DNA of 64,000 nucleotides, from the NCBI RefSeq assembly GCF_021869535.1, contig NW_026262734.1, positions 111,290,001-111,354,000 on the forward strand. Direction: 5' to 3'. Within the stretch, counting starts at the first letter, position 1; every line of letters starts with the position of its first letter. A program made the translations under genes and the position numbers. The DNA is from Mytilus californianus (Eukaryota). Below the pieces are notes generated by a model. It was not told the origin of the DNA, did not search any database, and saw only the letters and a list, made by a program, of their open reading frames with translations. Below, piece after piece: positions 16,350 to 53,766 of this stretch.

Positions 16350-19300
16350 TTGAGTTATGATTAAAGCTATGTCCAGTAATTTGGAATTTGAAGTTATGTC
16401 TGGCCCTTTGTGGTTGAAGTTATGTCTGGCCCTTTGTGGTTGAGTTGGAATTTGAAGTTATGTCTGGCCCTTTGTGGTTGAAGTTATGTCTGGCCCTTTG
16501 TGGTTGAAGTTATGTCTGGCCCTTTGTGGATGAAGTTATGTCCGGTCCTTTGTGTTTTAAGTTATGTCTGGCTATTTTTGGTTTAAGTTATGCCTGGCCC
16601 TTTGTGGTTGATGTAATGTCTTGTCCTTTGTAGGTGAAGTTATGTCTGGTCCTTTTTTGTGAAGTTACATTTGCCCCTTTGTGGGGGGAAATTATGTCTG
16701 GTCCTTTGTGGGTGAAGTTATTTCTGTTCATTTTGTGGGTGTTGTTATGTCCGGTCCTTTTTGGGTGAAGTTACATTTGCCCCTTTGTGGGTAATATTAT
16801 GTCTGGCCCTTTGATGTTGAAGTTATTTTTTTGTTATTTTGTAGGTGAAGTTATGTCTGGTCCTTTGTGGGTGAAGCTATGTCTGGCCCTTTGTTGGTGA
16901 TGTTATGTCTGGCCCTTAGTTGGTGGAGTTATATCTTGCCCTTTGTGGGTGAAGCTATGTCTGTCTTTTGTTGGTGAAGTTGTCTGGCCCTTTGTGGTTG
17001 AAGTTATGTCTGGTCCTTTGTTGGTGGAGCTATGTCTGGCCCTTTGTTGATGAAGTTATGTCTGGTCCTTTTTTGGTGAAGTTATGTCTGGTTCTTTGTA
17101 GGTGAAGTTATGTCTGGCCCTTTGTTGGTGGAGCTATGTCTTGCTCTTTGTTGGTGAAATTATGTCTGGTCGTTTGTTGGTGAAGTTATGTCTGGTCCTT
17201 TGTAGGTGAAGTTATGTCTGGCTCTTTGTGGTTGAAGTTATGTCTGGCCTTTTGTGTGTGAAGTTATGTCTGGTCCTTTGTGTGTGAAGTTATGCCTGGT
17301 CCTTTGTGGTTGAAGTTATGTCTGGCCTTTTGTGTGTGATGTTATGTCTGGTCCTTTGTGTGAAGTTATGTCTGGTCCATTGTTGTTGAAGTTATGTCTG
17401 GCCCTTTGTTGGTGGAGCTATTTCTTGCCCTTTGTTGGTGAAGTTATGTCTGGTCCTTTGTTGGTGAAGTTGTGTCTGGTCCTTTGTAGGTGAAGTTATG
17501 TCTGGCCCTTTTTTGGTGATGCTATGTCTTGCCCTTTGTGGTTGAGTTGGAATTTGAAGTTATGTCTGGCCCTTTGTGGTTGAAGTTATGTCTGGCCCTT
17601 TGTGGTTGAAGTTATGTCTGGCCCTTTGTGGATGAAGTTATGTCCGGTCCTTTGTGTTTTAAGTTATGTCTGGCTATTTTTGGTTTAAGTTATGCCTGGC
17701 CCTTTGTGGTTGATGTAATGTCTTGTCCTTTGTAGGTGAAGTTATGTCTGGTCCTTTTTGTGAAGTTACATTTGCCCCTTTGTGGGGGGAAATTATGTCT
17801 GGTCTTTTGTGGGTGAAGTTATTTCTGTTCATTTTGTGGGTGTTGTTATGTCCGGTCCTTTTTGGGTGAAGTTACATTTGCCCCTTTGTGGGTAATATTA
17901 TGTCTGGCCCTTTGATGTTGAAGTTATTTTTTTGTTATTTTGTAGGCGAAGTTATGTCTGGTCCTTTGTGGGTGAAGCTATGTCTGGCCCTTTGTTGGTG
18001 ATGTTATGTCTGGCCCTTAGTTGGTGGAGTTATATCTTGCCCTTTGTGGGTGAAGCTATGTCTGTCTTTTGTTGGTGAAGTTGTCTGGCCCTTTGTGGTT
18101 GAAGTTATGTCTGGTCCTTTGTTGGTGGAGCTATGTCTGGCCCTTTGTTGATGAAGTTATGTCTGGTCCTTTTTTGGTGAAGTTATGTCTGGTTCTTTGT
18201 AGGTGAAGTTATGTCTGGCCCTTTGTTGGTGGAGCTATGTCTTGCTCTTTGTTGGTGAAATTATGTCTGGTCGTTTGTTGGTGAAGTTATGTCTGGTCCT
18301 TTGTAGGTGAAGTTATGTCTGGCTCTTTGTGGTTGAAGTTATGTCTGGCCTTTTGTGTGTGAAGTTATGTCTGGTCCTTTGTGTGTGAAGTTATGCCTGG
18401 TCCTTTGTGGTTGAAGTTATGTCTGGCCTTTTGTGTGTGATGTTATGTCTGGTCCTTTGTGTGAAGTTATGTCTGGTCCATTGTTGTTGAAGTTATGTCT
18501 GGCCCTTTGTTGGTGGAGCTATTTCTTGCCCTTTGTTGGTGAAGTTATGTCTGGTCCTTTGTTGGTGAAGTTGTGTCTGGTCCTTTGTAGGTGAAGTTAT
18601 GTCTGGCCCTTTTTTGGTGATGCTATGTCTTGCCCTTTGTTGGTAAAGTTATGTCTGGTCCTTTGTTGGTGAAGTTATGTCTGGTCCTTTGTAGGTGAAG
18701 TTATGTCTGGCTCTTTGTAGTTGAAGTTATGTCTGGCCTTTTGTTTGTGAAGTTATGTCTGGTCCTTTGTGGGTGACGTTATGTCTGGTCCTTTGTGTGT
18801 GAAGGTATGTCTGGGCCTTTGTGGGTGAAGTTATGACTGGTCCTTTGTGTGTGAAGTTATATCTGGTCCTTTTTTGTGAAGTTCCATTTGCCCCTTCGTG
18901 GGGGAAATTATGTCTGGCCCTTTGTGGGTGTTGTTATGTCTGGTCCTTTTTGGGTGAAGTTACATTTGCCCCTTTGTGGGTAATATTATGTCTGGCCCTT
19001 TGATGTTGAAGTTATTTTTTTGTTATTTTGTAGGTGAAGTTATGTCTGGTCCTTTGTGGGTGGAGCTATGTCTTGCCCTTTGTGGGTGAAGCAATGTCTG
19101 GCCCTTTGTTGGTGAAGTTGTCTGGCCCTTTGTGGTTGAAGTTATGTCTGGCCCTTTGTTGGTGGAGCTATGTCTTGCCCTTTGTTGGTGAAGTTATGTC
19201 TTGTTCTTTGTTGGTGAAGTTATGTCTGGTCTTTTGTAGGTGAAGTTATGTCTGGCCCTTTGTTGGTGGAGCTATGTCTTGCCCTTTGTTGGTGAAGTTA

Positions 19301-20309
19301 TGTCTGGTCCTTTGTTGGTGAAGTTATGTGTGGTCCTTTGTAGGTGAAGTTACATTTGCCCCTTTGTGGGTAATATTATGTCTAGCCCTTTGATGTTGAA
19401 GTTATTTTTTTTGTTATTTTGTAGGTGAAGTTATGTCTGGTCCTTTGTGGGTGAAGCTATGTCTTGCCCTTTGTGGGTGAAGCTATGTCTGGTCTTATGT
19501 AGGTGAAGTTATGTTTGGCCTTTTGTTGATGGAGCTATGTCTTGCCCTTTGTTAGTGAAGTTATGTCTGGTCCTTTGTTGGTGAAGTTATATCTGGTCCT
19601 TTGTGGTTGAAGTTATGTCTGGCCTTTTGTGTGTGAAGTTGTGTCCTGTCCTTTGTAGTTGAAGTTATGTCTGGCCCTTTGTTGTTGGAGCTATGTCTTG
19701 CCCTTTGTTGGTGAAGTTATGTCTGGTCCTTTGTTGGTGAAGTTGTGTCTGGTCCTTTGTAAGTGAAGTTATGTCTGGCCCTTTGTTGGTGGAGCTATGT
19801 CTTGCCCTTTGTTGGTGAAGTTATGTCTGGTCCTTTGTGTGTGAAGTTATGCCTGGTCTTTTGTGGTTGAAGTTATGTCTGGTCCTTTGTTGGTGAAGTT
19901 ATGTGTGGTCCTTTGTAGGTGAAGTTATGTCTGGCTGTTTGTGGTTGAAGTTATGTCTGGCCTTTTGTGTGTGAAGTTATGTCTGGTCCTTTGTGTGTGA
20001 AGTTATGCCTGGTCCTTTTTGGTTGAAGTTATGTCTGGCCTTTTGTTGATGGAGCTATGTCTTGCCCTTTGTTGGTGAAGTTATGCCTGGTCCTTTGTTG
20101 GTGAAGTTGTGTCTGGTCCTTTGTAGGTGAAGTTATGTCTGGCCCTTTGTTGGTGGAGCTATGTCTTGCCCTTTGTTGGTGAAGTTATGTCTGGTCCTTT
20201 GTTGGTGAAGTTATGTCTGGTCCTTTGTAGGTGAAGTTATGTCTGACTCTTTGTGGTTGAAGTTATGTCTGGCCTTTTGTGTGTGAAGTTATGTCTGGGC
20301 CTTTGTGGT
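16350..20309. repeat. Satellite array, 26-bp unit, about 150 copies, with a ~1.1-kb higher-order repeat
   Basis: GAAGTTATGTCTGGYCCTTTGTKGGT repeated; diagnostic variants recur at 16441/17543 and 16681/17782/18898. Confidence 0.95.
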
Positions 20310-22140: not shown

Positions 22141-22257
22141 TTTTCAATTATAAAGATTGTGTCTATCACTAACTGTTTTCAAGTTATAATCATTTGAAAA
22201 AAAAAAAAAAAAACGTGTGTCTAGTGCACAAAATCATAAACCTGGTATCTTTGATGA

Positions 22258-23045
22258 GTTTGTTTTATACTATTCTAGAGTATCTGATGTCCACGTGTTT
22301 GTTTCGTACTATTCTAGAGTATCTGATGTCCACGTGTTTGTTTCATACTATTCTAGAGTATCTGATGTCCACGTGTTTGTTTCATACTATTCTAGAGTAT
22401 CTGATGTCCACGTGTTTGTTTCGTACTATTCTAGAGTATCTGATGTCCACGTGTTTGTTTCATACTATTCTAGAGTATCTGATGTCCACGTGTTTGTTTC
22501 ATACTATTCTAGAGTATCTGATGTCCACGTGTTTGTTTCATACTATTCTAGAGTATCTGATGTCCACGTGTTTGTTTCATACTATTCTAGAGTATCTGAT
22601 GTCCACGTGTTTGTTTCATACTATTCTAGAGTATCTGATGTCCACGTGTTTGTTTTATACTATTCTAGAGTATCTGATGTCCACGTGTTTGTTTCATACT
22701 ATTCTAGAGTATCTGATGTCCACGTGTTTGTTTCATACTATTCTAGAGTATCTGATGTCCACGTGTTTGTTTCATACTATTCTAGAGTATCTGATGTCCA
22801 CGTGTTTGTTTCATACTATTCTAGAGTATCTGATGTCCACGTGTTTGTTTCATACTATTCTAGAGTATCTGATGTCCACGTGTTTGTTTCATACTATTCT
22901 AGAGTATCTGATGTCCACGTGTTTGTTTCATACTATTCTAGAGTATCTGATGTCCACGTGTTTGTTTCATACTATTCTAGAGTATCTGATGTCCACGTGT
23001 TTGTTTTATACTATTCTAGAGTATCTGATGTCCACGTGTTTGTTT
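22258..23045. repeat. Highly homogeneous minisatellite, 39-bp unit, about 20 copies
   Basis: TACTATTCTAGAGTATCTGATGTCCACGTGTTTGTTTCA; nearly all variation is at one or two positions (TTCA/TTCG/TTTA). Confidence 0.97.
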
Positions 23046-23877
23046 GGGTTTATGTTGATCAAGCAATTGTTTTGTATTTTAATGTCTATGTTGTTTTTAC
23101 GGTTATGGTTTTTATCACCTCCGATAGGACACACTAGAGGAAATATGATACAAAGGCTAACAACGATTTGTTTTAAAAATCATAAAAATACTATATAAAT
23201 GTAGCTTTCAAAAACTGCATAGAATTCAGAACAAAGAAAGATAAAATGACAGACGCTATTTCAGTTTTAAGGGAAAAAACAAGTTCTAAATAGTCGCTTA
23301 TACATAACTTTTAACCAACTGATGTTAAGCTTGAACGCACAAAAACTAGACTATATTTGATACTCCCTGAATTATAAAACTCCATATTCATTGCACCTTG
23401 GATGAAGAATTTTTCACTCTTTATTTTGACCAAGTGTACCGACCAACACGATAGCTTTTCTAACGTAATTGTAAGTTTTCATTGACGGAGAACAAGAAAA
23501 ACACATCGACTGTAAATCCGGCAATGTCATTACAACTTTGATGTGTCGAAAGTTTCTTCGTTAATTTGCCGTTGCGAACATATTAATAAAAATCATCATT
23601 TCCTGTCAAAATTTCCGTGGTAATAGCCATTCCAGAAAAAATATAATAAAAACATATCATTTGTACATTCACAGAAAATCTCGAAAACGGGTATTGTTTT
23701 CATAAACATCATGATGTAACAAAAGTAATCAATTTTTAAGTTTTGATTATTTACATGTATTCACATCAAAGAATACAGTAACGAATTCTTGACATGTTTG
23801 CAATTAACCAATTTCCTGATGTTGAAAAACATAAGAGTGTGACTGTGGTTACAAAATTATAATGAATTGAACACCAA

Positions 23878-24120: not shown

Positions 24121-26273
24121 TCAGCTCATCAGAAAGTATGCAAGTAATAAACCTCACTATATCATCTCCTTATTTAATAAATCAGAGACTCTATGCAGTG
24201 TTTGTCTTATGTCATAAATTTATTGTTTTTTTTTCTTTACATTTAAAAAGAACTGGTGTTGCTGGCAGATCATTGAGTGTTACATTTCTTCTCAATTTTT
24301 GTAGGGTAGGGATAATTAGGAACTTTATGATTTGTTTAAACACCTGTTTATTATTGAATATAAGAAGTTGTGGTATATGTCATAACTATTGCCGATCAGA
24401 CAACTATCCACCAGAATCCAAATGAAAATCGACTGTATGTTACCCTTAACATGTATTTTTGGTTAATTTTATCGCTGGATTGTTGTCTTATTAAAGGTTT
24501 ACAACACATCGTCTTTTATTCAAACATATGATGCTGATTTACGTATGCGCAAGCGCAAATAATGTGTTGTTTGAATTTTTGATTACACTTCTATAGATTA
24601 GAGAAATCGAAACTCTTGAAAACCAAATATATGAAGTGACTTGCATCATCCCACATGGTTTTATATAATATATCATATATAATAACGATTATCTATAAAA
24701 CATATCATAAGATGTTATTACTAACTCAAAATATTTTAATTCCTTTTATCTGAACAGCCTCCGTGGATTGTGTTCTCTCTTAAAATGTTCGATCCCTGGT
24801 CAGTTATGCCTCAGACATGGTATTTGCCGCCTCTCCGCTTATCCCTCAATTTTAAAATCAAAAGTAAAACACTGACTAGAGTATGATTTTCCTTTGCTTG
24901 GTTAAGACGTATTTCTGCAAACTGTTACCTAAAAGAATTTTAGGCACTAAATGGATTTGTTGACATTTCAATATTCTTTCTCAATTACTAGAAAAACACT
25001 TTACATACCATTCAATGATTGGAATACAATTTTATGTTTTCAAGACGTTCGTGTAATTGACGATCGCGTGCCTGGCGGTCATTGAAAGGGACACTAATGC
25101 AAATTCGCATGCCTTTTAACCTTTGACCGTACAGTAAAATGCTTTTTAACATAGTATTACAAAGTTCTTAAATTATGCATCTTCTTAATTGTTTTGTTAC
25201 ATGTAAACAGTTGTTTTTATTGCAGTGTATTGAAGTCTGATAGCGCATGCCATAGATAGCATATAATCATGTTTACATGAAAAGAACAATATATAATTAT
25301 TTGTAAACAAAGACTTACAACACCTCTGGTCATTTTTACATCCAAAACTTGTAGCAAAATATTTACAAGCTATGTTTTCTTGTCAATTTCTGCATTATTA
25401 ATTATTTATGTCTAGGGTAGAAAACTTGTAATTAGTCTTAAGTAGTATGCTTTTTAGGGGTTATATATAGAAAACAAATGTTTTCATGAAGTACATTTTC
25501 GTCCTGAACATAAGGGTTCGGTTGGATAGGTAAGACGGATTTTTTTCTATACAGATTATTAATTGAGAAGCATTTATTTACAGATATTTATTCTACTTTT
25601 TGATGGTAAAAAAGTCACATAAATTTGTACAATTTGTTTGGAAATATATGAAGATAGCTTATCTTGAATATTTAACGAAAGTTAATTTTATTTAAACAAA
25701 ATTACTAATATATACCAAAGATAAGTATTGAGTAAATTTTTATAGTAAATGCCAGTAATCAAGTAACCCTGACTTATTGAGAAATAACAAAAGTAGTAAA
25801 TTTACTGATAAAATAATTCTAAGAAACATAAAAAAATCTTTACTGTTCGATAACACAAAAAGCAAACTTTGTCAATAAAAAGATGACATATTTTTTTTCG
25901 AATAATTCAAAATTATCGGTAGCTTATAAAATAACTGTTGATACATCGGATATCCTTGTCGCAAACTTTGAAAACAAAATTTATTGATTACACAATGCAA
26001 AAAAAAACGAAAATATTTTCATCGATACTTTCATTTCCATGTTTATTACAAACATCGTTAGGCTTTCTGTAATTCTTGAAACATGTAATATTGAGTTTAA
26101 TTTCACGGGGAGGGAAAATTAAAAATGAATCTCGTTAAATCTTACCGCCAGGGCAAGTAACTAAGAGTGCAATCATCTTCTTGTTGATATTTTGCTTTAC
26201 AAATATCAAAGGGGTATGTGAACTGATTATGTCTTCATGTACATATATATTCTTCTTCTAACAGAAATCCAGT

Positions 26274-26334
26274 ATGCATCTGTCCCTGCAATTGTTACTC
26301 AGTGTTCTAGGATTGTCTCTAGCAGACGACATTT
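26274..26334 (+). CDS. Gene A coding exon 1: signal peptide of a secreted Gly/Ser/Arg/Tyr-rich protein
   Basis: Acceptor TTCTTCTAACAG (26264), ATG at 26274, MHLSLQLLLSVLGLSLA|DDI, phase-1 donor GTAAGT at 26335. Not in the ORF track. Confidence 0.8.
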
Positions 26335-26344
26335 GTAAGTATGA

Positions 26345-26660
26345 ACTAAATACAAACACGTTTAACCCCGCCACATTCTGTATGTGCCTATCCCAAGTAA
26401 GGAGCCTGTAGGTGGTTGTCGTTGGTTCATGTCTGTCATATTTGTTCTTCGTAAATTGTATTGTTATACATTACGCCGTTAGTTTTCTTTTTTGATTTTT
26501 TTCACATTTTTTATGTCGGGGCCTTTTATAGCCGACTATACGGTATGGGTTTTTCTCATTGTTGAAGACCGAACTGTTGCATATAATTGCTTACATCAAC
26601 TTCATTTGAACTTTGGTGGGTAATTATCGCAATTGGCAATAATACCACATCTCCTTATTT
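26345..26660 (-). mobile_element. Abundant dispersed repeat copy in gene A intron 1
   Basis: Matches the copies at 2510-2810 and 8370-8680. Confidence 0.7.
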
Positions 26661-27347
26661 TTATTTATATCAAAGTTATTATTTTTTTTCAAAATAACGT
26701 ATATGTATGGTTGACAATGAGACAACTTTCTATAAGAGACGGAGAAGTTTAACTTGTTTCCTGTTTTGATAATTAATGAGAAGGACATGCCAAACTAAAA
26801 TAAAATGTTTATTTAAAGTAAAACTAAGTCGTGTCGTACATGCCTAAATTAATTCACTTTGATTCGGATGTAGTTCGATGTAAAAATATACAATTCACAA
26901 TACTGAATCAAAATGAATTTATACCTGAATGTACGTATAGCCCTTGCAAATTTTATTTTTATGAATGTCAAAATGTACAAAAGAAATGTACCTTATTGTA
27001 TATCATTTTGACTCTTTAATGTTCAAATCTCACTGATGATCTTCGAACTTCAAATCTTGACCTTATGAGTGAACAAATTCAGGTGAAACCAGTCATACAT
27101 CTTTCCTAGTCCCACAGTTATAAGATCGAAACAGTGACATTTTTATCCTTGCAAAAAAGAAAAAAAAACGAAGAAAGAAAATAAATTAAAAGGCCAAATA
27201 AATGAATATAAAAATAAACCAATAAGACATGTGTATTAAACCTTTCCAATCATAAATTTTAAATGACAAAACATTTTTCTATTTACCATTGCAAAATTAG
27301 CTTAAACATTATATATATGAAAAGTAATTTGTTTTATCATTTGTTAG

Positions 27348-27530
27348 GGAACTTTGGTGACTGGGATGATGACTATTCATACAACGGATATCAACCAACT
27401 GGTTTACTGCGTGGTGGTAGCCAAAGTTTTATGAGATATCCAACTTATCGCAGTTACAACAGGGGAAGTCGAGGTGTATCATCAGGATTTCGAGGAAATC
27501 GAGGAGGATCGTCAGGATTTCGAGGAAGCC
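27348..27530 (+). CDS. Gene A coding exon 2 (183 bp)
   Basis: TTTGTTAG acceptor and GTAAGT donor at 27531; (W)NFGDWDDDYSYNGYQPTGLLRGGSQSFMRYPTYRSYNRGSRGVSSGFRGNRGGSSGFRGS; in frame with exons 1 and 3. Confidence 0.88.
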
Positions 27531-27768
27531 GTAAGTGTCTTAAGATTTACTGTTCACAATCTGATTTAAATACAGATCCTGAATCCACTCTTTACTTACA
27601 CTCCGTTCTACTTTTAACGACTTTTCGGGATCCTTTGGTTTTGTCGTGATAATACACGTCTTAATATTTTTGAAAGCTGAACATCATTGGCTGATTTAAT
27701 AGTTACTAGAACAGGAAGTAGAATGATGTGTTGCCAAATGATTGTAAGGGAAGCATGGACATATGATA

Positions 27769-28987
27769 TGAGGGTATGGAGGGGTTTACAGAATAGGGAA
27801 TAATAAGCAAAGTAAAAAAAAAGAATAGAGAAAAATAGGCAATAAAAGTAAAGAGAAGAGAATAATGGGATAATATAAGATATTTTATTGGTTTAAAATC
27901 CAAAATTATAGGATTGTTACCAAAGACAGTAAACATTGGCTATACATAAACATGCAATCATATATCTGTCCACATTTATAAACATTGTATATATAAATTT
28001 GTATATCCCCTACATTATTAACAAGAAAATATGGTTACATTATTATATATATCTAATCTCTGCTGAGGAGGTTTCTAGAATAATTCTTATTATATCATTC
28101 TCACCACACGTATACAAAAATTTAAATCTTGCTTCATTATTCATATTTAAAAAAGAGGGAACTATTTCACTTATTTTAGAAAATGATTGTTCTCTAATTG
28201 TACATGTATTTCATTTTGCACATTTTATAGTGAAATGAAATTCATCTTCTACTTCTACTTGTAAAAGACACAAGGGACACATTCTTTCTTCTAAAGGAGT
28301 TTTAGTATGTTGACCTTGTTCAATTTTAAGAACACTATTACTTTCTTGATTTTGGCAAAATGTCCTATTACTTTTTTTTCAATGCTTAACATTAAATAGG
28401 TTTTCAATTTGTAATTTTCTTTAAGCTGTCTGTATGTTCTGAGCTTATTACCGTTCAATGATTTATCATCGCAAAACATATTTTCTTTCCAATAATTCAG
28501 GTATCTATCATTAAGTTTGTTATGAAGTGCGTACAATAAAAGCCTTTTTGAAATAGTATCCTAATTTTCCAACACATGTGAAAAAATTAATGTAGCAAGT
28601 AACTGTTCAATCTGTCTTGCAAATCCATTGGCAGGTTTGAACTATATACATCTTTAAGTAAACAATTATTACCAGATTTTATCACATGCAACCAGAAGCC
28701 AATTGACTGTTATAAAGCTTCTATAAAAACTGGATACATACCATGTTCAGCTAGTACTGCTAAATTGACAGCTGTTTTATTTACTCCAATTAAAGTTTTT
28801 GTAAATTTAATCTGAATTTTAATGGTAGCCATTGACCAATATTTTGACTCTAGATTTGTAATATCTTTAATCCTATAAGGAGACCAAACTTTACTACAAT
28901 AAAGAATGCTAAATTAGAAAGAATAGAGAAAAATGGGCACAAAAAATAAAGAATAAATAAATGAAGGATTCCCCATCCAGACCCTCA
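27769..28987. mobile_element. TIR element (TGAGGGT termini, TA TSD) carrying a nested LINE fragment
   Basis: TA|TGAGGGTATGGAGGGG at the left and CCCCATCCAGACCCTCA|TA at the right; internal AGAATAGAGAAAAAT blocks on both sides of the LINE piece. Confidence 0.65.
28230..28904 (-). pseudogene. Non-LTR retrotransposon (CR1/L2-group LINE) ORF2 C-terminal remnant
   Basis: My minus-strand translation gives LYCSKVWSPY...IKFTKTLIGVNKTAVNLAVLAEHGMYP...*QSIGFWLHVI; the ORF track gives YLNYWKE...NKLRTYRQLKENYKLKTYL. Both resemble the post-RT region of LINE ORF2; an in-frame stop is present. Confidence 0.75.
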
Positions 28988-29055
28988 TAAATATTTTTTT
29001 TCATGTTACATTTTTATAACATGTAATGAAACTTTTGATTGATTATTTTTTTCAG

Positions 29056-30498
29056 TTGGATCCACCGGACTCTCATATAATACTGGGTATAGTCAAAATA
29101 AAGGATACGGTTCCTATGGTAACAGTTATAGCGGAAGTCGAGGTTATGGCTCCAATGGCATCAACTATGGTAGTGGAATGTTAACGACTGGATCCTTAGG
29201 TACGTCGATAAGGCCATCAGGGAGGTCTAGATATTATTCGAAAAGTTCATCAATTATTAGACCAAGAGGCAATATTGGAAACAATTTTGGAATAAGGTCT
29301 CTCAATGACGACGACGATTTTGATGATATCAACATTGGTGTTCTTGGTCCTTCTGTTGCTAGGGCACAAACCGGAAGTCGATCTGTACGACCAACAATTA
29401 AGAATCATCAAAGAAAATCTGCTATTAGACCTTTAATAAACAATGTGCCGTCACCGATCAATATTGGAAGATCTTTTGATAACGACGAAGATGAAATAAA
29501 TAGAGGAGTTCTTGGGCCTGCTGTTGTTAGAAGCGGAGGCAGTAGAGCTTCCATACGGCCAATAGCCAAGAAAACGTATCACAGGAAACTAGCCTCTGTT
29601 CGAACCACTGGTAGTGCTGGTGTGGCACCATCACCTGTGAGAACATCTTTTGACGACAACGGAGATGACTTTGACGACGATAATGGTATTCTAGGTTTCA
29701 GTTCTGCAGGTCGACCTTCTGGTATAGCAAGAAAAATATCTCCAAGACTGGGATCCATTGGTAGATCATCTATTGGAATACAACCATCGTTTGGTAATGA
29801 TAGAGATGACTTTGACGACGATAATGGTATTCTAGGTTTCAGTTCTGCAGGTCGACCTTCTGGTATAGCAAGAAAAATATCTCCAAGACGGGGATCTATT
29901 GGTGGATCATCTATTGGAATACAACCATCGTTTGATAATGATAGAGATGACTTTGATAGAGATATACAAGACGATTTCAATGGGGATTTTCAAGATGACT
30001 TTAATGGTGGAATACGTGGGGCGTCTATAAATAGAAATGGTGGAATACTTGGGGCGTCTGTAAATAAAGCTGGGCCGACTTCAACGGGATCAATTACAGG
30101 TAGTCTGGGACCTGCTATAAACAGGGGTGGACATTCATCGCAGTCAAAATCTACTTACTACCACAGAAAACCACACCAGAATATACATGTAACGCATGTA
30201 CATAAATATCGACCGGATTACGATGAAGACAATTTTGGAAGTGCACCAGTATTTAACAGTAGACCACTATACGGTGGATATGCTGGATATGGTACACAGT
30301 ATCCACAATATGGGTCATATGGTTATAGAAGCGGTAACAGTTATGCCAATGGAGGCGGATTTGGAAGCGGAAACTTTGGTGGTGGATCTGGTTTTAGGGG
30401 TCGCTTCCGAGGTTCTGGCGGAGGAAGTGGTGGACGTGGCGGTTCCGGTTCCGGTGGTGGAGAAAGTGATGATTTTGATTTCGATGATGACGAAAGTG
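29056..30498 (+). CDS. Gene A coding exon 3 (1443 bp)
   Basis: TTTTTTTCAG acceptor; open frame starting (L)GSTGLSYNTGYSQNKGYGSYG and running through the 458-aa ORF to DDDES; GTAAGT donor at 30499; length is a multiple of 3. Confidence 0.92.
29664..29960 (+). repeat. 141-bp (47-aa) coding tandem repeat, 2 copies plus a partial
   Basis: DDFDDDNGILGFSSAGRPSGIARKISPR.GSIG.SSIGIQPSF.NDR; units start at 29664, 29805 and 29946. Confidence 0.95.
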
Positions 30499-30694
30499 GT
30501 AAGTATACGTTGAACAACTTCCTTTTTAATATGTCTTTAATAAAACAATTTTGATACTACAACTGATTTTGCTTGGTACAGATACATTGAGAAAAAACAC
30601 CAAAGATAGGCGAACAAATTATAACTGTGTACTGAGGTAATCTATCATTTAAAAAAATGTCTTATATCTCAGGAATTCAATATCAAGTCTTTTG

Positions 30695-30898
30695 ATAGGC
30701 CCTTTCACGGTTATTTCAGCCATATTGAATAGGGGAAGATTTTCATAGTGGAGGTGAAAATCCTTAAAAAACACGGGACAACATAATTGATACAGAACAG
30801 TTGCTTAGAAACATGCATATGTTTTCCCTTTCTTTATTACTATTTCCCCCTCCATCAAAAAAATTTGTCCCTATTCAATATATTTTTTAATGGCCTAT
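30695..30898. mobile_element. Small MITE-like insertion in gene A intron 3
   Basis: Terminal ATAGGCC/GGCCTAT and internal inverted repeat ATATTGAATAGGG (30722-30734) / CCCTATTCAATAT (30869-30881). Confidence 0.55.
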
Positions 30899-30960
30899 TT
30901 TTAAAAAAAAATCTTATTTGACAAGAGTATAAGATAAATTTATCATCAATATTTCAGCAG

Positions 30961-31179
30961 GATCTAGCGGTAGTTCTGGCAGCGGAGGTGGATTCGGCGG
31001 TGGATTTAATGGTCTGGGTGGTATTGGTGGTGTAGCAGGACGATTTGTCGGTGGAGGTTTTGGATCAGTTGGTGGTATTGGTAGTATCGGTGGCAACCAA
31101 GGTCGCTATTACGGATATGGAGTATATCCTAACAGTAAAAATATTAACCACTATGCTAACTATAAGAATAGTTACAGAA
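30961..31179 (+). CDS. Gene A coding exon 4 (219 bp; 222 bp with the alternative acceptor at 30958)
   Basis: TTTCAGCAG tandem acceptor; (G)SSGSSGSGGGFGGGFNGLGGIGGVAGRFVGGGFGSVGGIGSIGGNQGRYYGYGVYPNSKNINHYANYKNSYR; GTAAGT donor at 31180. Confidence 0.88.
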
Positions 31180-31795
31180 GTAAGTACTTAGATTAAATAT
31201 CAGCAGACATCAGCATACTATCATACACCAAATGCGAATAATTTACAAATATATTGAGAACATTATGCACTGTCCGGCGAGAATCTTACTAAATTATTAT
31301 TCCATCCCGAGACCGTAATTTTGTATACTTTTGAAAGCACCGTAGAAGTATTGACAATCAACGTTCTTATAACCTCTTAACCATCTTACGTGAAACCGAC
31401 ATAGTGTTTCACTATATCATGTATATGCTTAAGTCCATTTTGACAAAATGAAACATCAGTGAACACGGTTTGACTATACTGACAAGTTGCTTAAACGATA
31501 CTCTCCGATAACAACGCTTTTATAATTTTATTTATAATTTTCCCTCGAATGAAACTCGTTTTTATCTATATTGCCCTTAGGACCGTCAAAACCATTTCTT
31601 ATTACATAGGAATTGGGGATATCTTTATCAAAGAGATTCTTTATCCTTAGAACCTGTCGCAAAAAAAAAAACACCACCAAAATATACCAATTTAAAAAAA
31701 GAGCTATATGACATGCGCGATGACACGTAAACAATCTTCCATATCGAACTTTTTCTATACATGATCAATTGAGGGGGATGACACCTTTTTAGTAT

Positions 31796-32005
31796 GTGGG
31801 ATATAGGGGTAAAAAAGTGGGGATTAAGGGTATAGGGGGTAAGGAAAATAGGGATGTGGGATATAGGGGATGAAAAAAGTGGGGATAAAGGGTAAAGGGG
31901 GTAAGGAAAATAGGGATGTGGGATATAGGGGATGAAAAAAGTGGGGATAAAGGGTAAAGGGGGTAAGGAAAATAGGGATGTGGGATATAGGGGATGAAAA
32001 AAGTG
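31796..32005. repeat. Purine-rich 60-62-bp repeat, about 3.5 copies, inside a possible MITE (31770-32110)
   Basis: GTGGGATATAGGGG units start at 31796, 31856, 31918 and 31980; flanked by TGAGGGGG and CCCCCTCA. Confidence 0.85.
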
Positions 32006-32645
32006 AGATCTAGGAAAAATCATCCGAAAGGGAAAAAAATTGGGAGGTGTCAAAAAATTACAAAAAAAAGCCGGTTTTGTTAAATGGCCAACCCCGTGTC
32101 GACCCCCTCATTAATTATCATTTGTGTTTTATGTTATTGTTTTGTGGTATTTTGTTTTTTATTCCCGTCAATGTGTTTTTTTCTCTTCATCAAACTATTT
32201 AAATTTGAATATGTGTTAAGTATATATCTGTGATCTCAGTATATTGTTATCTGTTAGCTATTTATTCTTATCACATAATTTCACTCTATAAAATAATATT
32301 TTAATCACACAACATTACCTAGAACGTAAATACTACGATTCTTTAAATAAATAATGAAATAAATCATAAATTTTAAACTGATATATTCCGGATAAAATGT
32401 ATAAACGAAGTCCTTTTTTATTTAAATATTTTCAAGGCTCAAAGGTCATCCTGGCTCTTTTTAATTGATACAATTGGATAATGGTAATGTTTGTGTAATT
32501 AACCTGTAACAGCAGTGGTACTAAATGCATTATAAACCTGTTAGCTAAATTATTTTATATATTACATGCATTACGCTACACGTACGACCGAATTCGTTTA
32601 ATGTATTGGCATAATTAGTCTAACAACCTACTTTCTTCATTACAG

Positions 32646-32656
32646 AGTCATACTAA
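32646..32656 (+). CDS. Gene A terminal coding micro-segment (K-S-Y-stop)
   Basis: CTTTCTTCATTACAG acceptor; A|AG TCA TAC TAA completes the phase-1 codon; AATAAA follows 105 bp later. Confidence 0.65.
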
Positions 32657-32760: not shown

Positions 32761-32766
32761 AATAAA
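32761..32766 (+). terminator. Candidate polyadenylation signal of gene A
   Basis: AATAAA downstream of the predicted stop at 32656. Confidence 0.55.
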
Positions 32767-34818
32767 CTGACTGATTTGTGAGAATCTATGGGAGGTTATC
32801 TGTCTTCAATCCGGTTTACAACTTGTTAGATCTCGAAACTGATAAGTTTTTAATAAATGTATTAAACTGGTTTTACTTATTCCCACTAGACATTTTTTAT
32901 GGCATACAGTTCGATCTTATTATTTTGAATGTTTGTGTGTCATGGATGACAATTGACTTGACTTGTTGTTTTGTAAGAATATAACCAACAGAAGTAAATC
33001 AAAATTCTCAATTTGATTTCAAATCTTCCAGTATACCGACACCTACATCACAAGAACAAAGGAACACTCAGTGGTAGTTGCATTTTATTTCGCCATTTAA
33101 AAAACAAAACAAAACAAACTGGAACAATTCAACTTCTTGATAATAGCATACGAGTATAAAGGAGAAAATTTACATTGCTTAATATTTTTCCTTTCTAAAA
33201 TATGCCAAAATGTACATGTATGTGCGACTTCATGATGTATAAATATTGCGTATAATATCGTTTCATCTTGGCCTCTTGTAAATGTTCTAAAACTAATCGT
33301 TCAGTGCTTTTAACTAGTCCCTTAACTACTATCATCACCTTTGGTAATAAAAATGGGAAATGAAAATAGTGGAATTAACTATTTTTGGAGTTTAAAAAAT
33401 GTTTATGATTCGGTTGAGTGTTGACTTTTAGACTCTCTACACTTCACTTCCACAAAATCTTGTCAAACGAAAGTTTTCCTATTCAATAAAATTGTCCTTT
33501 CCTAGATTAAGATATTTCATTTTTTTTCACGGGAAACTCTACACAAACTTTACGACAAAAGGCACGATTTTCGTTCTCTGGTGATATTTTTTCTTTTTTT
33601 GGATGGTGGGAAAGTGTCTTTGGCCTCATCTTACGGTGTTTATATATCCATCTCATCACTATGGCCGTGTAACGTAATCTATGTATTACTGGAAATTATC
33701 AAGTCAAGGATTTCGTTACCATAAATTGCTTTTAAAACCTTTACTCATTTTTTTCATATATACAAAGATTTGGTTTGAAAGTTTGGCTGTACCTGTAGAA
33801 AACTTATTGCAAACGGGATAGCACACCTTAATTTTTCGGTGATGTTGTTTATCGAGCTCAAAAATTAGGATACGATCCGGGTAAACTTATCGATCCTCCA
33901 TATAAACTTACAAGGTAAAAATATAACACTGTAATTAGATCTTTGAATGTTGTTTTTATTTGCATACATATTGATTTTGTTATACCAAACTAAATATCAT
34001 TGCTATACACCTGTACAACATTCATGGTCCTACATTCTGTCGACACCTATTTTGGCATTGCTCTAGATCATGTTTTTCTCTGACTGTTAATAACATCATT
34101 GCACTTAATTCATTAGATATTGAATGTGTATTGGTTGATATTTCAGTTTTATATTCATGATTTTTTATTGGCTTTGAGCTGTACTTTGTGTCTTTAGTGT
34201 TTTTATTAGTTGTTTTTTGTATTTTGTGAAGATCTGTTGAGTTAATCCCTTTTTAAGTGATTTTTTATAGTTTGTTCTTATGTTGTGCTTTTACACGACT
34301 GTCCCAGGTAAGAAGGAGGGTTGGGTGCCCGCAAACATGTTTTACCCCACACTCTCTATGTGCCAGTCCCAAGTCAGGAGCCTGTAATTCAGTGGTTGTC
34401 GTTCCTAGCTGTATATCATATTTATTTTTCGTTAATTGTTTTACCTTTTTCATTTAGAGCCTTTGATAATTTCCTATGCAGTAATGGATTTGCTCAATGT
34501 TTAAGAAGATATGGTGACCCAGAGTGTCCAACTTCTACGCCATTTGGGCTCTGATGGAGAGTTGTCTCATTGACAATCCTACCACAGCTTCTTACTTCTA
34601 TATTATGTGTGGTATAATTTGGTTGGCCATGATACTGCGTGAACTTCATATATTTAGGCTTTTTAATTTGAATTCGTACCAACAATTTATCTGCACCAGG
34701 AAAATATTGCGTCAACATTTTTGAAAACAAATGTAACAGTGAAAGAAACAAATGTAGAATTTAATATCTAAAAGGGCCTAACCTAAATGGAATAGTCAAA
34801 ACTGTCAACTTTGACTAA

Positions 34819-39616: not shown

Positions 39617-39680
39617 ATGGAAAAACTGCTTGTATTCACGACGCTATTATTTATTGGAGCTACTGCCACAAATAACTACT
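39617..39680 (+). CDS. Gene B coding exon 1: signal peptide
   Basis: TTTTTTCAG acceptor (39607), ATG at 39617, MEKLLVFTTLLFIGATA|TNNY, phase-1 donor GTGAGT at 39681. Not in the ORF track. Confidence 0.82.
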
Positions 39681-40048
39681 GTGAGTGTAACAAACTTATA
39701 AAAAACAAATGTTTAGGCTTTTCACCAGCCTGGGGATGATTTTTTTTATTCCAATATTATATTCAGTGGACAGTTGTTACAGTATATTTTCTATCTACGA
39801 TTATGTACAATTGTAATTAAGAATAATTGTAAAATTATGTGATATTTGAATCTAAAATTTCGTAGTACCTATATTTAAATTTAAACACTGACAATATTTG
39901 TATATTTTTTTGTTTGCATAAATTTCGTCTTTGTTTGATAAAATTTGACCAAAATGATAAATGGTTATATAATTGTTTTTTTTTTTGTGTTGACTAACAT
40001 TAAAAGAAAGTCAGTTTTAAGTTTCATAGGAGTGTCTTATACTTACAG

Positions 40049-40192
40049 GGACGTATGAGCAAAATGAACCCCTCATTAATACAGGAAGTTTAGGTAACCC
40101 AGGTGGATGCCAATGCTCGTGCGAACCTGCTATAGAGCCACGTAGAGGGAGCGGCGCTTTATCAACAAACAGAAGACGCAGACGTAAAAACC
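40049..40192 (+). CDS. Gene B coding exon 2 (144 bp)
   Basis: CTTATACTTACAG acceptor; (W)TYEQNEPLINTGSLGNPGGCQCSCEPAIEPRRGSGALSTNRRRRRKN; GTAAGT donor at 40193. Confidence 0.85.
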
Positions 40193-40614
40193 GTAAGTTG
40201 GTATAGTTATAAGAATTCACTAAAGACTTTTTTATAAAAGTTCACAATTTTCACGATTATCATTTAAGACTTCATACTGGGAGAGCTATATTACCAAAAT
40301 ATCGCAAATTACCGCACTGTAATGTAAATAAAATTAAACTATTTCTATTGATATGTTTGAGAAGAACTTAGATAGTAACAGTTAAAAAATGTTAGTGAAA
40401 TGAAAAAGAATTAAATCCAGTCTACAAATGTCAATACACATTTTCAGAGTGCGGGTAACGAAGGCACTAACTAGTCTGTTTTTTTTATAAGTTTGAAAAA
40501 AAATGTTTGGCGAGTGAAAGAAATTCTTTCCGAACATCTTATTTTTCAAAAGAAGAAAATAATGAATGCACTTTCAGTATCAACAAGTACATTTCTATTA
40601 TTTTAATATCCTAG

Positions 40615-40923
40615 GCCGGAGACAGCGTCAACCAGTAATACCAGAAGTTATTCCTCAAACTCCTAATTTCATTGAAAGAGGCTCTCGTGGTATAAGAGTG
40701 ACTGACCCAATACCAGAAACAAGGGGCCTAGGAGGTGGAATCAGAGCTCCAGTATCAAAAACACAACGTCGAATTGGTGTAGGAGATGCAGTTTTACGTG
40801 GCGTTGCTGGTTTTGAAGGAGGTGCACCGTCTAGTGGAGTTTTACAGCCAGAATATAGATTTGATAATGGACATGACAACGGTTTTGTGGATAACGGTTT
40901 TGATAATGGCATACATGGCAACG
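40615..40923 (+). CDS. Gene B coding exon 3 (309 bp)
   Basis: TTTTAATATCCTAG acceptor; (R)RRQRQPVIPEVIPQTPNF...FDNGHDNGFVDNGFDNGIHGN; GTAAGT donor at 40924. Confidence 0.88.
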
Positions 40924-40942
40924 GTAAGTAAATATTAAAGAA

Positions 40943-41089
40943 TTGAATGCTTCTTTTTGTAACTTCATTGGGGTGTAAAACCGTTGACCGAAGTACATTT
41001 TGTATGAAGCGCGGAAGCGCTTCATTCTAAAAATGTGCGCACTGTCAACGCTTTTACAACCCTATGAAGTTACAAAAAGAAGCATTCAA
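40943..41089. repeat. 147-bp imperfect palindrome, part of a dispersed repeat, 20 bp after the exon 3 donor
   Basis: Perfect 26-bp outer arms TTGAATGCTTCTTTTTGTAACTTCAT / ATGAAGTTACAAAAAGAAGCATTCAA; inner stem ATGAAGCGC-GGAA-GCGCTTCAT. Confidence 0.9.
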
Positions 41090-41776
41090 TACTTATAATT
41101 ACATTTTTTAGCTAGGGTCATGATAACACGATTTTTATCAAGTTTTTATTTAATTTACCTGTGCATTTTATTGTGGGACCTCGTGTCATCATGAATGATA
41201 AATTTTATTGTGTAATGAAGTTGATTAAGGAATAACGCCAGATTGCAGTTAGCCAATCAGAATAACGTATTATAATGAAACATACATCTAAAGTAATTAT
41301 AAGCTTTTAGGTTAATCAGTACTTAATTTCATATATAGGTATATAACCTAATTTAAAAAAAAAATCTTCAACCCATATTTATTAGTCATGCATATGGATG
41401 CAAGAAAAGGAATGTCGAAGTATCCCAAAAACTAAATGACAGTACTTACAAATGGAAATACCATGCAGTTATACTTCAAAAATTGGAAAGCAAAAATATT
41501 GATACAAAACAAAAACTTAGAAAGATATACCTATCAATGCTGATTCAGAACTTTTGCTATTTGAACATCTTTGAAATCAAATGTGAAAGCGTATGGGGAT
41601 ATTTGACAACGGCGAAATGACAGGTATCCCAATATATCAATTGGAAATACACGTTTTTTGCTTTCATTTGTCATCCTTGGTTTGAGGCATTAAATATACC
41701 TAAAACGCAACCATTACTACATATTAAGGTTATTTTATTTATGTTTCCATATCTAAAATGCATTTGTTTATGTTGC

Positions 41777-41905
41777 NNNNNNNNNNNNNNNNNNNNNNNN
41801 NNNNNNNNNNNNNNNNNNNNNNNNNNNNNNNNNNNNNNNNNNNNNNNNNNNNNNNNNNNNNNNNNNNNNNNNNNNNNNNNNNNNNNNNNNNNNNNNNNNN
41901 NNNNN
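41777..41905. other. Assembly gap (129 N)
   Basis: Run of N in gene B intron 3. Confidence 0.99.
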
Positions 41906-42610
41906 GATTGGAAACAAAGTGGAATTATTACAGAATAAACCACAGTTTTGTATAAACAATTTATACCTTGTATCTGGGTAACTAGTATAATAGTCCCAGC
42001 TTGTATGAATTTAAGAATCTATTAAAGACTTTATTTAGAAAATCATTAGAAAAGTTATTTGGCGGTTAACCAACTCTTTAATGTTAACTCCCAACATATC
42101 AGATGGTCATATTCATTGTGGCTGGAACTGCTTATAACAAAGAAAATATATATTAGGATTCGAAAAGAAACTCAAAGTCAAGTTGTATTACTATTAGTAG
42201 AAGTTAAGCGTTCATTCCAAGATAAACAAACTTAAATTACAACTTAATTGCAAATGCAGGAGACGTTAAAGCACCATTGCAAACACATTTAATGCTAGAA
42301 TCTTTCAACTTATATACATCTTTAGTAAAAGATTTCGTGTCACGAAAAGGTTGGATCATATAAGGTTAGGTCAAATAATCGGGTGGTACATTTTCGGTTT
42401 TGAATATCGATTCACATCACTAAAAACCAATAATTCCTGAAAAAGGAAATTGAAAAAAAAACAAAAAAAAAAACAAGGCAAAACAATTAGAAATGATTTG
42501 AAAAAAGTATGGTTTACTTTATTTCATGATCAATTTTTGATAATTTAATTTGTTGCAGATAATTATGTTAATAGATTATCAAGAATGAGTCTCAATAACT
42601 TTTTTGACAG

Positions 42611-53693: not shown

Positions 53694-53766
53694 ATGGTGT
53701 TATATTTTCGACTGGTGTTGCCCATAGTGGTTTTGTTTTGCCTGACTTGCAGCGAAGCACATAAAG
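53694..53766 (+). CDS. Gene C coding exon 1: signal peptide
   Basis: TTCTTTTTAG acceptor (53684), GCCATGG start context, MVLYFRLVLPIVVLFCLTCSEA|HK, phase-1 donor GTAAAT at 53767. Not in the ORF track. Confidence 0.8.

What the first reader, a model, noticed from the sequence alone, without database searches (positions are those of the whole stretch)
26274..32656. Gene A: ~638-aa secreted multi-block protein
Seen: the spliced CDS is 61+183+1443+219+11 = 1917 bp and open throughout. Block order is a Tyr/Gly/Ser-rich N-terminus with FRG/RGG motifs, an Asp/Arg modular centre, a His-rich patch, GYG/GGF repeats, an acidic DDFDFDDDE stretch, then a Gly-rich exon and a Tyr/Lys/Asn tail. There is no Cys in the mature protein. 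Inference: an intrinsically disordered matrix protein that could self-coacervate, bind mineral and cross-link through Tyr/DOPA.
Basis: partly seen in the sequence, partly recalled or inferred. Interest (0 to 1): 0.7.

Follow-up and report, generated by a model that had tools for sequence, protein, structure and literature searches.

The report
Uncharacterised secreted disordered mussel matrix protein
This is a real, spliced and strongly tissue-restricted California mussel gene for a secreted, cysteine-free, disordered protein with alternating acidic and basic blocks; it is already in RefSeq as "uncharacterized", occurs only in mytilid mussels, and probably builds shell, periostracum or byssus, though which one is not shown.

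Summary
The five-exon model (61+183+1443+219+11 nt, all GT-AG, all introns phase 1) equals RefSeq XP_052073486.1 of Mytilus californianus (638 aa, isoform X2). Spliced RNA contigs from three independent studies show the first three junctions. They use the acceptor 3 nt upstream at exon 4 (30958), which gives the 639-aa isoform X1. The exon 4-5 junction lay outside the reads window and rests on RefSeq and on orthologues.

- **Composition:** every block claim is correct, and there is no Cys in the whole protein.
- **Secretion and disorder:** it has a 17-residue signal peptide and no transmembrane segment. N-glycosylation sequons are depleted (0 against 7.3 expected). AlphaFold pLDDT is below 50 at every residue. 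Charge is segregated into blocks (z = 8.5).
- **Constraint and range:** dN/dS is about 0.25 and the gene is single-copy. There is no Pfam match. A profile search of 1.84 billion representatives found only Mytilus orthologues and one more distant, unnamed group.
- **Context:** it heads a conserved cluster of three secreted low-complexity genes. Gene B ends in the RKKYKY tail typical of shematrin and KRMP shell proteins.
- **Expression:** very high in some runs, absent in another, and present in one seawater poly(A) metatranscriptome.

Best reading: an extracellular matrix protein, shell or periostracum slightly favoured over byssus. Coacervation, mineral binding and DOPA cross-linking are untested. 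No paper mentions it.

The parts
26274..26334 (+). Exon 1. It holds the ATG, the 17-residue signal peptide (26274-26324), DDI and the first base of a split Trp codon, followed by a gtaagt donor. RNA contigs reach back only to about 26263 and then carry 3-11 letters that do not fit the genome. That suggests a further 5'UTR exon upstream, joined at the acceptor ...aacag|aa at 26264/26265.
   Evidence: (joint 26334>27348 in X5, X9, X15)
27348..27530 (+). Exon 2 (183 nt, phase 1-1). It encodes an acidic DWDDD start and then a Tyr/Gly/Ser/Arg-rich block with FRG/RGG motifs. It contains a 30-nt tandem repeat at 27464-27527.
29056..30498 (+). Exon 3 (1443 nt, phase 1-1), the bulk of the protein. In order it encodes a G/S/Y block, the polyampholyte centre, the His patch, the GYG/GGF/RGG block and the acidic SDDFDFDDDES stretch.
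   Evidence: joints 27530>29056 and 30498>30958; dN/dS 0.25
29202..30101 (+). Modular centre (residues 131-430). It has five to six modules, each an acidic S-F-D-x-D..DDF[DN] motif, then G[IV]LG, then an Arg/Ile/Pro/Ser-rich basic stretch ([IV]RP). Net charge alternates between about -7 and +5 per 20 residues. The motifs are invariant in the distant homologues.
29662..29956 (+). Tandem duplication of 141 nt (47 aa), 2.1 copies, 97% identical. The other Mytilus species have one copy. One X5 contig lacks one copy (skip 29661>29803, with 87 letters fitting either side). This is a repeat-number allele or an assembly collapse, not an intron.
30102..30221 (+). His-rich patch (6 His in 40 residues, ...YYHRKPHQNIHVTHVHKY...). 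It is conserved in Mytilus and absent from the distant homologues.
30222..30497 (+). GYG/GGF/FRG Gly-rich block (37% Gly) ending in the acidic SDDFDFDDDES stretch. The acidic stretch is invariant in all homologues.
30958..31179 (+). Exon 4 (222 nt from 30958 as seen in RNA, or 219 nt from 30961 in isoform X2; CAGCAG tandem acceptor, NAGNAG type). It encodes XGnX-type Gly repeats (49% Gly, GVAGRFVGGGFGSVGGIG conserved in L001) and then the Tyr/Asn/Lys tail.
32646..32656 (+). Coding part of exon 5, which completes ...R-K-S-Y and the TAA stop. AATAAA signals follow at 32761-32766 and 32852-32857. The junction was not covered by the reads laid here. It is taken from RefSeq and from the conserved KSY end of the orthologues.
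   Evidence: X9 contigs stop at 31179

Best explanation
**What it is.** Gene A is a single-copy, mytilid-restricted gene. It encodes a mature protein of about 65 kDa and pI about 9.6 that is secreted, free of Cys and of glycosylation sequons, and intrinsically disordered. I read it as a structural or organising component of an extracellular mussel biomaterial. The most likely site is the shell/periostracum organic framework made by the mantle, and already by planktonic larvae.

**How I think it works.**
- *Shown by sequence:* a 17-residue signal peptide takes it into the secretory pathway, and the chain has no folded domain.
- *Inferred:* acidic DDFD blocks alternate with Arg-rich blocks. These are flanked by Arg/Tyr/Phe/Gly-rich ends (RGG/FRG, GYG, XGnX). 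Together they let the chains condense on themselves or with partners through charge and cation-pi contacts.
- *Inferred:* the Asp runs can hold Ca2+ or mineral surfaces, and the His patch can hold metal ions.
- *Inferred:* the Gly/Tyr ends and the basic Tyr tail anchor or cross-link it into the insoluble framework, as is proposed for shematrin and KRMP proteins.

**My odds.** Secreted matrix protein of some biomaterial: about 0.8. Shell/periostracum specifically: about 0.45.
For: **The gene is real and spliced as modelled.**

**Secretion.** Signal peptide and no transmembrane segment. Sequon depletion in four species.

**Disorder.** pLDDT below 50 throughout. No Pfam family.

**Block polyampholyte.** Charge segregation z = 8.5 for the mature protein and 6.1 for the centre, with 0 of 1000 shuffles reaching the observed value.

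**Functional constraint.** dN/dS 0.25 and 0.2. Acidic and GILG motifs are invariant at 44-54% overall identity. The exon 4 homologue is conserved in L001.

**Gland-product type of expression.**
- Contig word depth is 750-1140 in X9.
- The gene is present even in runs whose whole contig set is about 1 Mb (X11, X14).
- There are zero exon reads in 1.55 Gb of another RNA run of the same species (X21).

**Leaning to shell.**
- Spliced transcripts, with 0-1 other letters per exon piece (about 99.8% identical overall), occur in a seawater oligo-dT metatranscriptome (X15). That fits planktonic larvae, which make shell.
- The neighbouring Gene B ends ...SRRRHRKKYKY, the RnKmY signature given for shematrins and KRMPs in PMC3896809.
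- Gene A itself has XGnX Gly repeats, a Gly/Tyr block and an R-K-S-Y end.
- The A-B-C order is conserved in M. edulis, as the fused model CAG2227853.1 shows.
Against: - No tissue label, in situ result or proteomic peptide ties it to shell.
- Its conserved peptides were not found in the Perna viridis shell proteome supplements or in the pteriomorph larval/adult shell protein supplements.
- The C-terminus RKSY is not a strict RKKKY-type signature.
- No sequence homology to any named shell protein was detected.
- The seawater signal could come from gametes, shed tissue or pediveligers that already make byssus, and only one of three runs of that study held it.
- The conserved His patch and the Lys/Tyr-rich neighbour Gene C would suit byssus equally well.
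- The AlphaFold disorder call rests on a shallow 10-sequence alignment.
Confidence: 0.45

Rival explanations
1. It is a byssus protein made by a foot gland: a thread, plaque or cuticle matrix component. The His patch and the Asp blocks would bridge metal ions and Ca2+ between preCols and foot proteins, and the Gly/Tyr/Asn ends would act like thread-matrix proteins.
For: - The family was found only in mytilids, which are byssate.
- The His-rich patch is conserved within Mytilus.
- It has Gly/Tyr/Asn-rich ends and sits next to a strongly cationic Lys/Tyr-rich gene, Gene C.
- Expression is very high and tissue-restricted, as for gland secretions.
- Pediveliger larvae in plankton already make byssus.
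- From my own knowledge: mfp-4 combines His-rich and Asp-rich repeats, and TMP-1 and the preCol-NG flanks are Gly/Tyr/Asn- or XGn-rich.
Against: - Tyr is only 5.6% and Lys 2.5%, unlike the DOPA/Lys-rich foot proteins.
- The motifs were not found in the Perna viridis byssus proteome supplements.
- Neighbour B carries the shematrin/KRMP-type tail.
Confidence: 0.3
2. It is a secreted but non-skeletal product, for example a component of mucus, the crystalline style or an egg or sperm coat, or another lineage-specific extracellular protein. Its low-complexity blocks would have no role in shell or byssus.
For: - Only secretion, disorder and tissue restriction are actually supported.
- Spawned gametes would also explain a seawater poly(A) signal.
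- No proteome links it to a hard material.
Against: - The composition (Gly/Ser/Tyr/Arg/Asp, XGnX repeats, basic Tyr tail) and the neighbours match the repetitive low-complexity proteins of molluscan biomaterials.
- The absence of sequons argues against a mucin-like glycoprotein.
- There are no furin R-x-[KR]-R sites, so it is not a peptide precursor.
Confidence: 0.15
3. It is not secreted. It would be either a membrane protein, as the RefSeq name ('uncharacterized transmembrane protein DDB_G0289901-like') suggests, or an intracellular RGG/FG-type condensate protein.
For: - The RefSeq name.
- RGG/FRG and GYG motifs also occur in nuclear RNA-binding proteins.
Against: - The only hydrophobic segment is the N-terminal 17-residue signal peptide. 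The highest 19-residue hydropathy window in the mature chain is 1.06.
- The name comes from a compositional match to a Gly/Ser-rich Dictyostelium protein; there is no Pfam domain or RRM.
- Sequon avoidance fits passage through the ER.
Confidence: 0.03

Closest known systems
Shematrins (Gly-rich prismatic-layer framework proteins of Pinctada; Yano et al. 2006, as described in PMC3896809)
   Same: - Signal peptide.
- Gly/Tyr-rich domains.
- XGnX repeats in which Gly runs are followed by a hydrophobic or aromatic residue (exon 4: GGGFGGGFNGLGGIGGVAG...).
- A short basic C-terminal tail ending in Tyr.
- Repetitive, low-complexity and Cys-poor.
   Different: - Gene A is two to three times larger.
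- It carries a 300-residue acidic/basic modular centre, a His patch and Asp runs that shematrins lack.
- Its end is RKSY, not RKKKY/RRKKY/RRRKY.
- No sequence homology was detected.
- Mantle-edge expression is not shown.
KRMPs (Lys-rich matrix proteins of Pinctada; PMC3896809)
   Same: [quoted passage not shown] The neighbours Gene B (RKKYKY end) and Gene C (Lys/Tyr block followed by a Gly block) resemble this layout more closely than Gene A does.
   Different: KRMPs are about 10 kDa and have a Lys(-Trp) domain straight after the signal peptide. Gene A is 65 kDa, Arg-rich rather than Lys-rich, and starts with an acidic DWDDD segment.
Modular acidic shell proteins such as MSP-1 (SG/D/K domain repeats) and Prismalin-14 (Gly/Tyr region with Asp-rich ends). 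This comparison is from my own knowledge and was not checked with a tool.
   Same: Repeated modules that combine Asp-rich, basic and Gly/Ser-rich segments. Asp-rich stretches lie next to a Gly/Tyr region that is thought to bind chitin or the framework.
   Different: Gene A is basic overall (pI 9.6), not acidic. Its motifs (SFDxD..DDFD, G[IV]LG, [IV]RP) are its own. No homology was detected.
Mussel byssal matrix proteins: mfp-4, TMP-1 and the preCol-NG flanking domains. This comparison is from my own knowledge.
   Same: A His-rich element combined with Asp-rich elements (mfp-4), Gly/Tyr/Asn-rich disordered sequence (TMP-1) and XGn Gly repeats (preCol-NG). All are restricted to mytilids.
   Different: Gene A has low Tyr and Lys, no collagen or known repeat consensus, and is not among the named foot proteins in the databases.
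Dictyostelium DDB_G0289901, the source of the RefSeq name
   Same: Gly/Ser-rich low-complexity composition only.
   Different: Gene A has no transmembrane segment in the mature protein. The nearest ESM-Atlas neighbours are likewise only compositional (keratin-like and hornerin-like, score at most 0.79).

Membership tests
Shematrin | N-terminal signal peptide | tested here: met
   MHLSLQLLLSVLGLSLA|DD. It is the highest hydropathy window in the protein and is conserved in orthologues. The test was heuristic; no SignalP run was available.
Shematrin | Gly-rich XGnX / GnY repeat domains | tested here: met
   Residues 471-551 are 37% Gly with GYG/GGF motifs. Exon 4 is 49% Gly with Gly runs followed by F, L, I or V.
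Shematrin | C-terminal signature RKKKY / RRKKY / RRRKY / PRKKY (PMC3896809) | tested here: not met
   Gene A ends ...NSYRKSY, and ...NSYGKSY in the other Mytilus species. The end is basic and finishes in Tyr, but it is not the signature. Neighbour B (...RHRKKYKY) does carry it.
Shematrin | Detectable sequence relationship to Pinctada shematrins | tested here: not met
   The word-based search returned only four clusters and none of them is named a shell protein: two are Mytilus 'uncharacterized' entries and two are unnamed, undetermined sources. The profile search of 1.84 billion representatives returned two. Low-complexity kinship is hard to detect, so this result is weak.
Shematrin | Expression in the mantle edge and presence in the prismatic layer | not testable with these tools
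   Run metadata are coded. No Mytilus shell proteome with sequences was readable.
DOPA-rich mussel foot proteins (mfp) | High Tyr (typically above 10-20 mol%) with Lys, and foot-gland expression | tested here: not met
   Tyr is 5.6% and Lys 2.5%. No named foot protein is among the hits. Gland expression could not be tested.
Transmembrane protein (the RefSeq name) | At least one membrane-spanning hydrophobic segment outside the signal peptide | tested here: not met
   The highest 19-residue Kyte-Doolittle window in the mature chain is 1.06.
Intrinsically disordered secreted repetitive low-complexity matrix proteins (a functional class, not a homology family) | Signal peptide, no folded domain, biased repetitive composition, lineage restriction and high tissue-specific expression | tested here: met
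   Presence in an extracellular material was not tested.
Prohormone / processed peptide precursor | Repeated peptides flanked by dibasic or furin (R-x-K/R-R) sites | tested here: not met
   There are 0 R-x-[KR]-R sites and only 8 scattered dibasic pairs, which do not flank the repeats.

The most novel reading that the evidence does not exclude
Gene A is the large scaffold of a mytilid-specific 'biomaterial gene cluster' (A-B-C, conserved across Mytilus). On this reading it is a Cys-free, glycan-free block polyampholyte that self-coacervates, concentrates Ca2+ and metal ions, and recruits the small shematrin/KRMP-like products of genes B and C into the larval and adult shell or periostracum framework. 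That would be a new protein family with its own conserved motifs (SFDxD..DDFD, G[IV]LG, [IV]RP), and a co-located, co-regulated set of condensate-forming matrix genes.
Probability: 0.25. Interest if true: 0.6.

Novelty: new member of a known kind. Interest (0 to 1): 0.4.

Why it matters
Mussel shell and byssus are models for biomineralisation and for wet materials. Most of their repetitive low-complexity proteins are lineage-specific and unstudied.

This protein has several features that make it a good candidate for study:
- It is abundant in the runs that express it and is conserved under purifying selection.
- It is free of Cys and of glycosylation sequons, which makes it easy to express.
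- Its clean alternation of acidic and basic blocks makes it a natural test case for sequence-encoded coacervation.

Its linkage to two other secreted low-complexity genes offers a small, tractable locus for asking how such matrix genes arise and are co-regulated.

On the other side, it is already annotated in RefSeq, and it belongs to a well-known general class. The finding is therefore a solid candidate rather than a surprise.

Tried and rejected
- **Pfam.** Scans of exons 2, 3 and 4 found no family, even at E <= 1.
- **ESM Atlas.** Only compositional look-alikes came up (score at most 0.79), and there was no structure to search with.
- **Paper searches.** All of these returned 0 papers: the RefSeq name with Mytilus, five conserved peptides, and twelve accession or LOC numbers of the protein and its orthologues.
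- **Supplement searches for conserved peptides.**
  - Perna viridis shell proteome: absent.
  - P. viridis byssus proteome: absent.
  - Pteriomorph larval/adult shell protein tables: absent.
  - No supplement text is held for the M. edulis shell proteome, the M. edulis shell-repair paper or the tyrosinase/byssus paper.
- **General literature searches.** Searches on foot-gland transcriptomes, shell proteomes, periostracum and M. californianus RNA-seq gave background only.
- **Rejected: the 141-nt skip in X5 is an intron.** It removes exactly one tandem repeat unit and 87 letters fit either side.
- **Rejected: a transmembrane protein**.
- **Rejected: a peptide precursor**.
- **Rejected: paralogues in the genome.** There is a single match.
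- **Logan members of the orthologue cluster.** They are unspliced genomic exons and give no extra RNA evidence.
- **Tissue of the expressing runs.** It could not be learned because run metadata are coded.

Full report
**Method note**

For whole-protein analyses I used the public proteins that the homology search returned: P0001 (638 aa) and P0005 (639 aa). The N run at 41778-41905, in an intron of Gene B, was left untouched.

**1. The observation**

Exon boundaries and frame:
- Reading the sequence and a script place the five exons at 26274-26334, 27348-27530, 29056-30498, 30961-31179 and 32646-32656.
- Each internal exon is preceded by AG. Each of exons 1-4 is followed by GTAAGT.
- The lengths are 61+183+1443+219+11 = 1917 nt.
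- All four introns are phase 1, so exons 2-4 are symmetrical 1-1 modules.
- Each exon is open in its own phase.

Match to the public record:
- The word-based protein search returned a 100% identical 638-aa protein, P0001.
- It is XP_052073486.1, [quoted passage not shown].
- The organism is therefore the California mussel, and the model is already the RefSeq model.

**2. RNA evidence (stretch 26230-32229)**

Junctions:
- Contigs of runs X5 and X9 (the same species, two studies) and of X15 (a seawater oligo-dT metatranscriptome) carry the joints 26334>27348, 27530>29056 and 30498>30958. All are GT..AG.
- At exon 4 all three runs use the upstream AG of a CAGCAG acceptor. That gives a 222-nt exon and one extra Ala, which is isoform X1 (P0005, XP_052073485.1, 639 aa).
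It was not seen in these contigs, but contigs drop rare variants.

Ends of the transcript:
- X9 contigs stop at 31179, the donor of exon 4. The junction to exon 5 lay outside the permitted 6,000 letters.
- That junction rests on RefSeq and on the conserved ...KSY end in M. trossulus, M. edulis and M. galloprovincialis.
- If exon 4 were not spliced, the frame would end ...SYRSKYLD*.
- Contigs reach back to about 26263 and then carry 3-11 letters that do not fit the genome. A further 5'UTR exon is therefore likely.

Expression level:
- Introns have no depth apart from dispersed repeats.
- Contig word depth on the exons is 750-1140 in X9. It is zero in 1.55 Gb of the raw RNA run X21 of the same species.
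- Even runs whose whole contig set is about 1 Mb hold more than 80% of the exon 3 words.
- Expression is therefore very high in some samples and absent in others.

The 141-nt skip:
- One X5 contig skips 29661>29803.
- This is exactly one unit of a 97%-identical tandem duplication, and 87 letters fit either side.
- It is a repeat-number allele or an assembly collapse, not splicing. The other Mytilus species have one copy.

**3. The protein**

Composition:
- G 20.2%, S 14.4%, R 8.3%, D 7.5%, N 6.9%, Y 5.6%.
- No Cys anywhere.
- The mature protein is about 65 kDa with pI 9.6.

Secretion:
- The only hydrophobic segment is the N-terminal signal peptide.
- The mature chain has no window above 1.06 on the Kyte-Doolittle 19-residue scale. 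The "transmembrane" in the RefSeq name is therefore a compositional artefact.
- There are 44 Asn but no NxS/T sequon, against 7.3 expected (p about 0.0005). Three orthologues have 1 against 8.3-8.6 expected. That fits a chain that passes through the ER and must stay unglycosylated.

Charge pattern and other motifs:
- Acidic and basic residues are segregated into alternating blocks. z = 8.5 for the mature protein and 6.1 for the centre, and no shuffle out of 1000 reaches the observed value.
- The centre consists of five or six modules: SFDxD..DDF[DN], then G[IV]LG, then an Arg/Ile/Pro/Ser stretch with [IV]RP.
- There are no furin sites and only four S-x-[DE] sites.

Disorder:
- AlphaFold2 on a 10-sequence alignment gives a mean pLDDT of 28, with every residue below 50.
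- Pfam finds nothing.

**4. Relatives**

| Search | Result |
|---|---|
| Word-based protein search | Four clusters |
| HMMER profile of the family against 1.84 billion representatives | Two clusters: the Mytilus cluster and an unnamed cluster at 44-54% identity |
| M. californianus genome | One match, so the gene is single-copy |

- The unnamed cluster comes from a metagenome contig and from Logan contigs. The source species was not determined.
- Those contigs keep the intron position after the acidic stretch. They also keep a downstream exon with GVTGRFVGGGFGSIGGI and a basic Tyr/Asn end.
- Orthologues in M. trossulus, M. edulis and M. galloprovincialis are all labelled "uncharacterized".
- dN/dS over exon 3 is 0.25 against a Mytilus orthologue contig (L003) and about 0.2 against the distant homologue, where dS is saturated.

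**5. Neighbourhood**

- An M. edulis gene model of 1079 aa (CAG2227853.1, P0010) is a mis-fusion of the orthologues of genes A, B and C of this window. The order A-B-C is therefore conserved.
- All three genes encode signal peptides followed by low-complexity sequence.
- Genes A and B both end exon 1 with a phase-1 split Trp codon.
- Gene B ends ...SRRRHRKKYKY.
- PMC3896809 gives RKKKY/RRKKY/RRRKY as the shematrin C-terminal signature and RKYKY/RRKY as the KRMP one. It describes both families as Gly/Tyr-rich shell framework proteins.
- Gene A shares the XGnX Gly repeats, a Gly/Tyr block and a basic Tyr end (RKSY), but not the strict signature. It adds a large centre of its own.

**6. Interpretation**

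*Shown:*
- It is a real, spliced, constrained, single-copy gene.
- It has a signal peptide, no folded domain and a block-polyampholyte pattern.
- Its distribution is restricted to mytilids.
- Its expression is very high and sample-specific.
- Transcripts are present in a plankton poly(A) sample.

*Inferred:*
- It is an extracellular matrix protein.
- It condenses through charge and cation-pi contacts.
- Its Asp runs bind Ca2+ or mineral, and its His patch binds metal.
- Its Gly/Tyr ends integrate it into an insoluble framework.

*Which material:*
- I favour shell/periostracum (about 0.45) over byssus (about 0.3).
- The reasons are the shematrin/KRMP-like neighbours, the low Tyr and Lys content, and the plankton signal.
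- None of these is decisive. No proteome or tissue label could be obtained, and no paper mentions the protein.

**7. Novelty and verdict**

- The gene model is already public, so the observation itself is not new.
- The protein is uncharacterised. It defines a small mytilid-only family with conserved motifs of its own, inside the well-known class of secreted repetitive low-complexity biomaterial proteins. That makes it a new member of a known kind.
- Interest is moderate at 0.4. It is a good experimental candidate, not a surprise.

Noticed in passing
window 39617-42918 (Gene B): A secreted small protein gene whose exon 1 (39617-39680) ends in a phase-1 split Trp codon, as in Gene A. It has a CQCSC segment, an RRRRRK-type polybasic site, and a C-terminus ...SRRRHRKKYKY* (about 42880-42917) that matches the shematrin/KRMP RnKmY signature. 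Its M. galloprovincialis orthologue is XP_076106161.1 (P0008). An N run lies in its intron at 41778-41905 and was left untouched.
   Followed up: partly
window 53694-56547 (Gene C; large exon ORF 55723-56547): A secreted protein with a strongly cationic Lys/Tyr/Pro/Ser block followed by a Gly/Phe/Ile block, a KRMP-like or foot-protein-like layout. Its M. edulis orthologue is XP_071177310.1 (P0006), labelled 'uncharacterized'. Genes A, B and C are fused in the M. edulis model CAG2227853.1, which shows conserved synteny.
   Followed up: partly
window 29662-29956: A 141-nt (47-aa) tandem duplication inside exon 3, specific to M. californianus. One RNA assembly (X5) lacks one copy, so a repeat-number polymorphism is possible.
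   Followed up: partly
window 26355-26830 and 27790-28990 (introns 1 and 2): Dispersed repeat or transposon-like sequence. Many RNA reads and contigs from all M. californianus (organism A) RNA runs align only partly here, with loose ends, strand switches and high depth. This is unrelated to Gene A transcription.
   Followed up: no
window 31794-32005 (intron 4): A 62-nt tandem repeat, 3.5 copies, 97% identical, G/A-rich.
   Followed up: no
window 11870-12439: A long open exon encoding a two-pore-domain K+ channel-like segment (TIGFGD pore motif), so an unrelated neighbouring gene.
   Followed up: no
window 16000-20000 and 22194-23198: At 16000-20000 there is a strongly skewed G-rich/T-rich region (GC skew +0.34 to +0.38, AT skew -0.44 to -0.57). 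At 22194-23198 there is a long satellite with a tandem repeat of about 48 nt that produces spurious ORFs.
   Followed up: no
Gene A protein and its Mytilus orthologues: N-glycosylation sequons are almost absent despite 44-51 Asn residues (0-1 observed against 7-9 expected). This is an unusual and conserved avoidance.
   Followed up: yes
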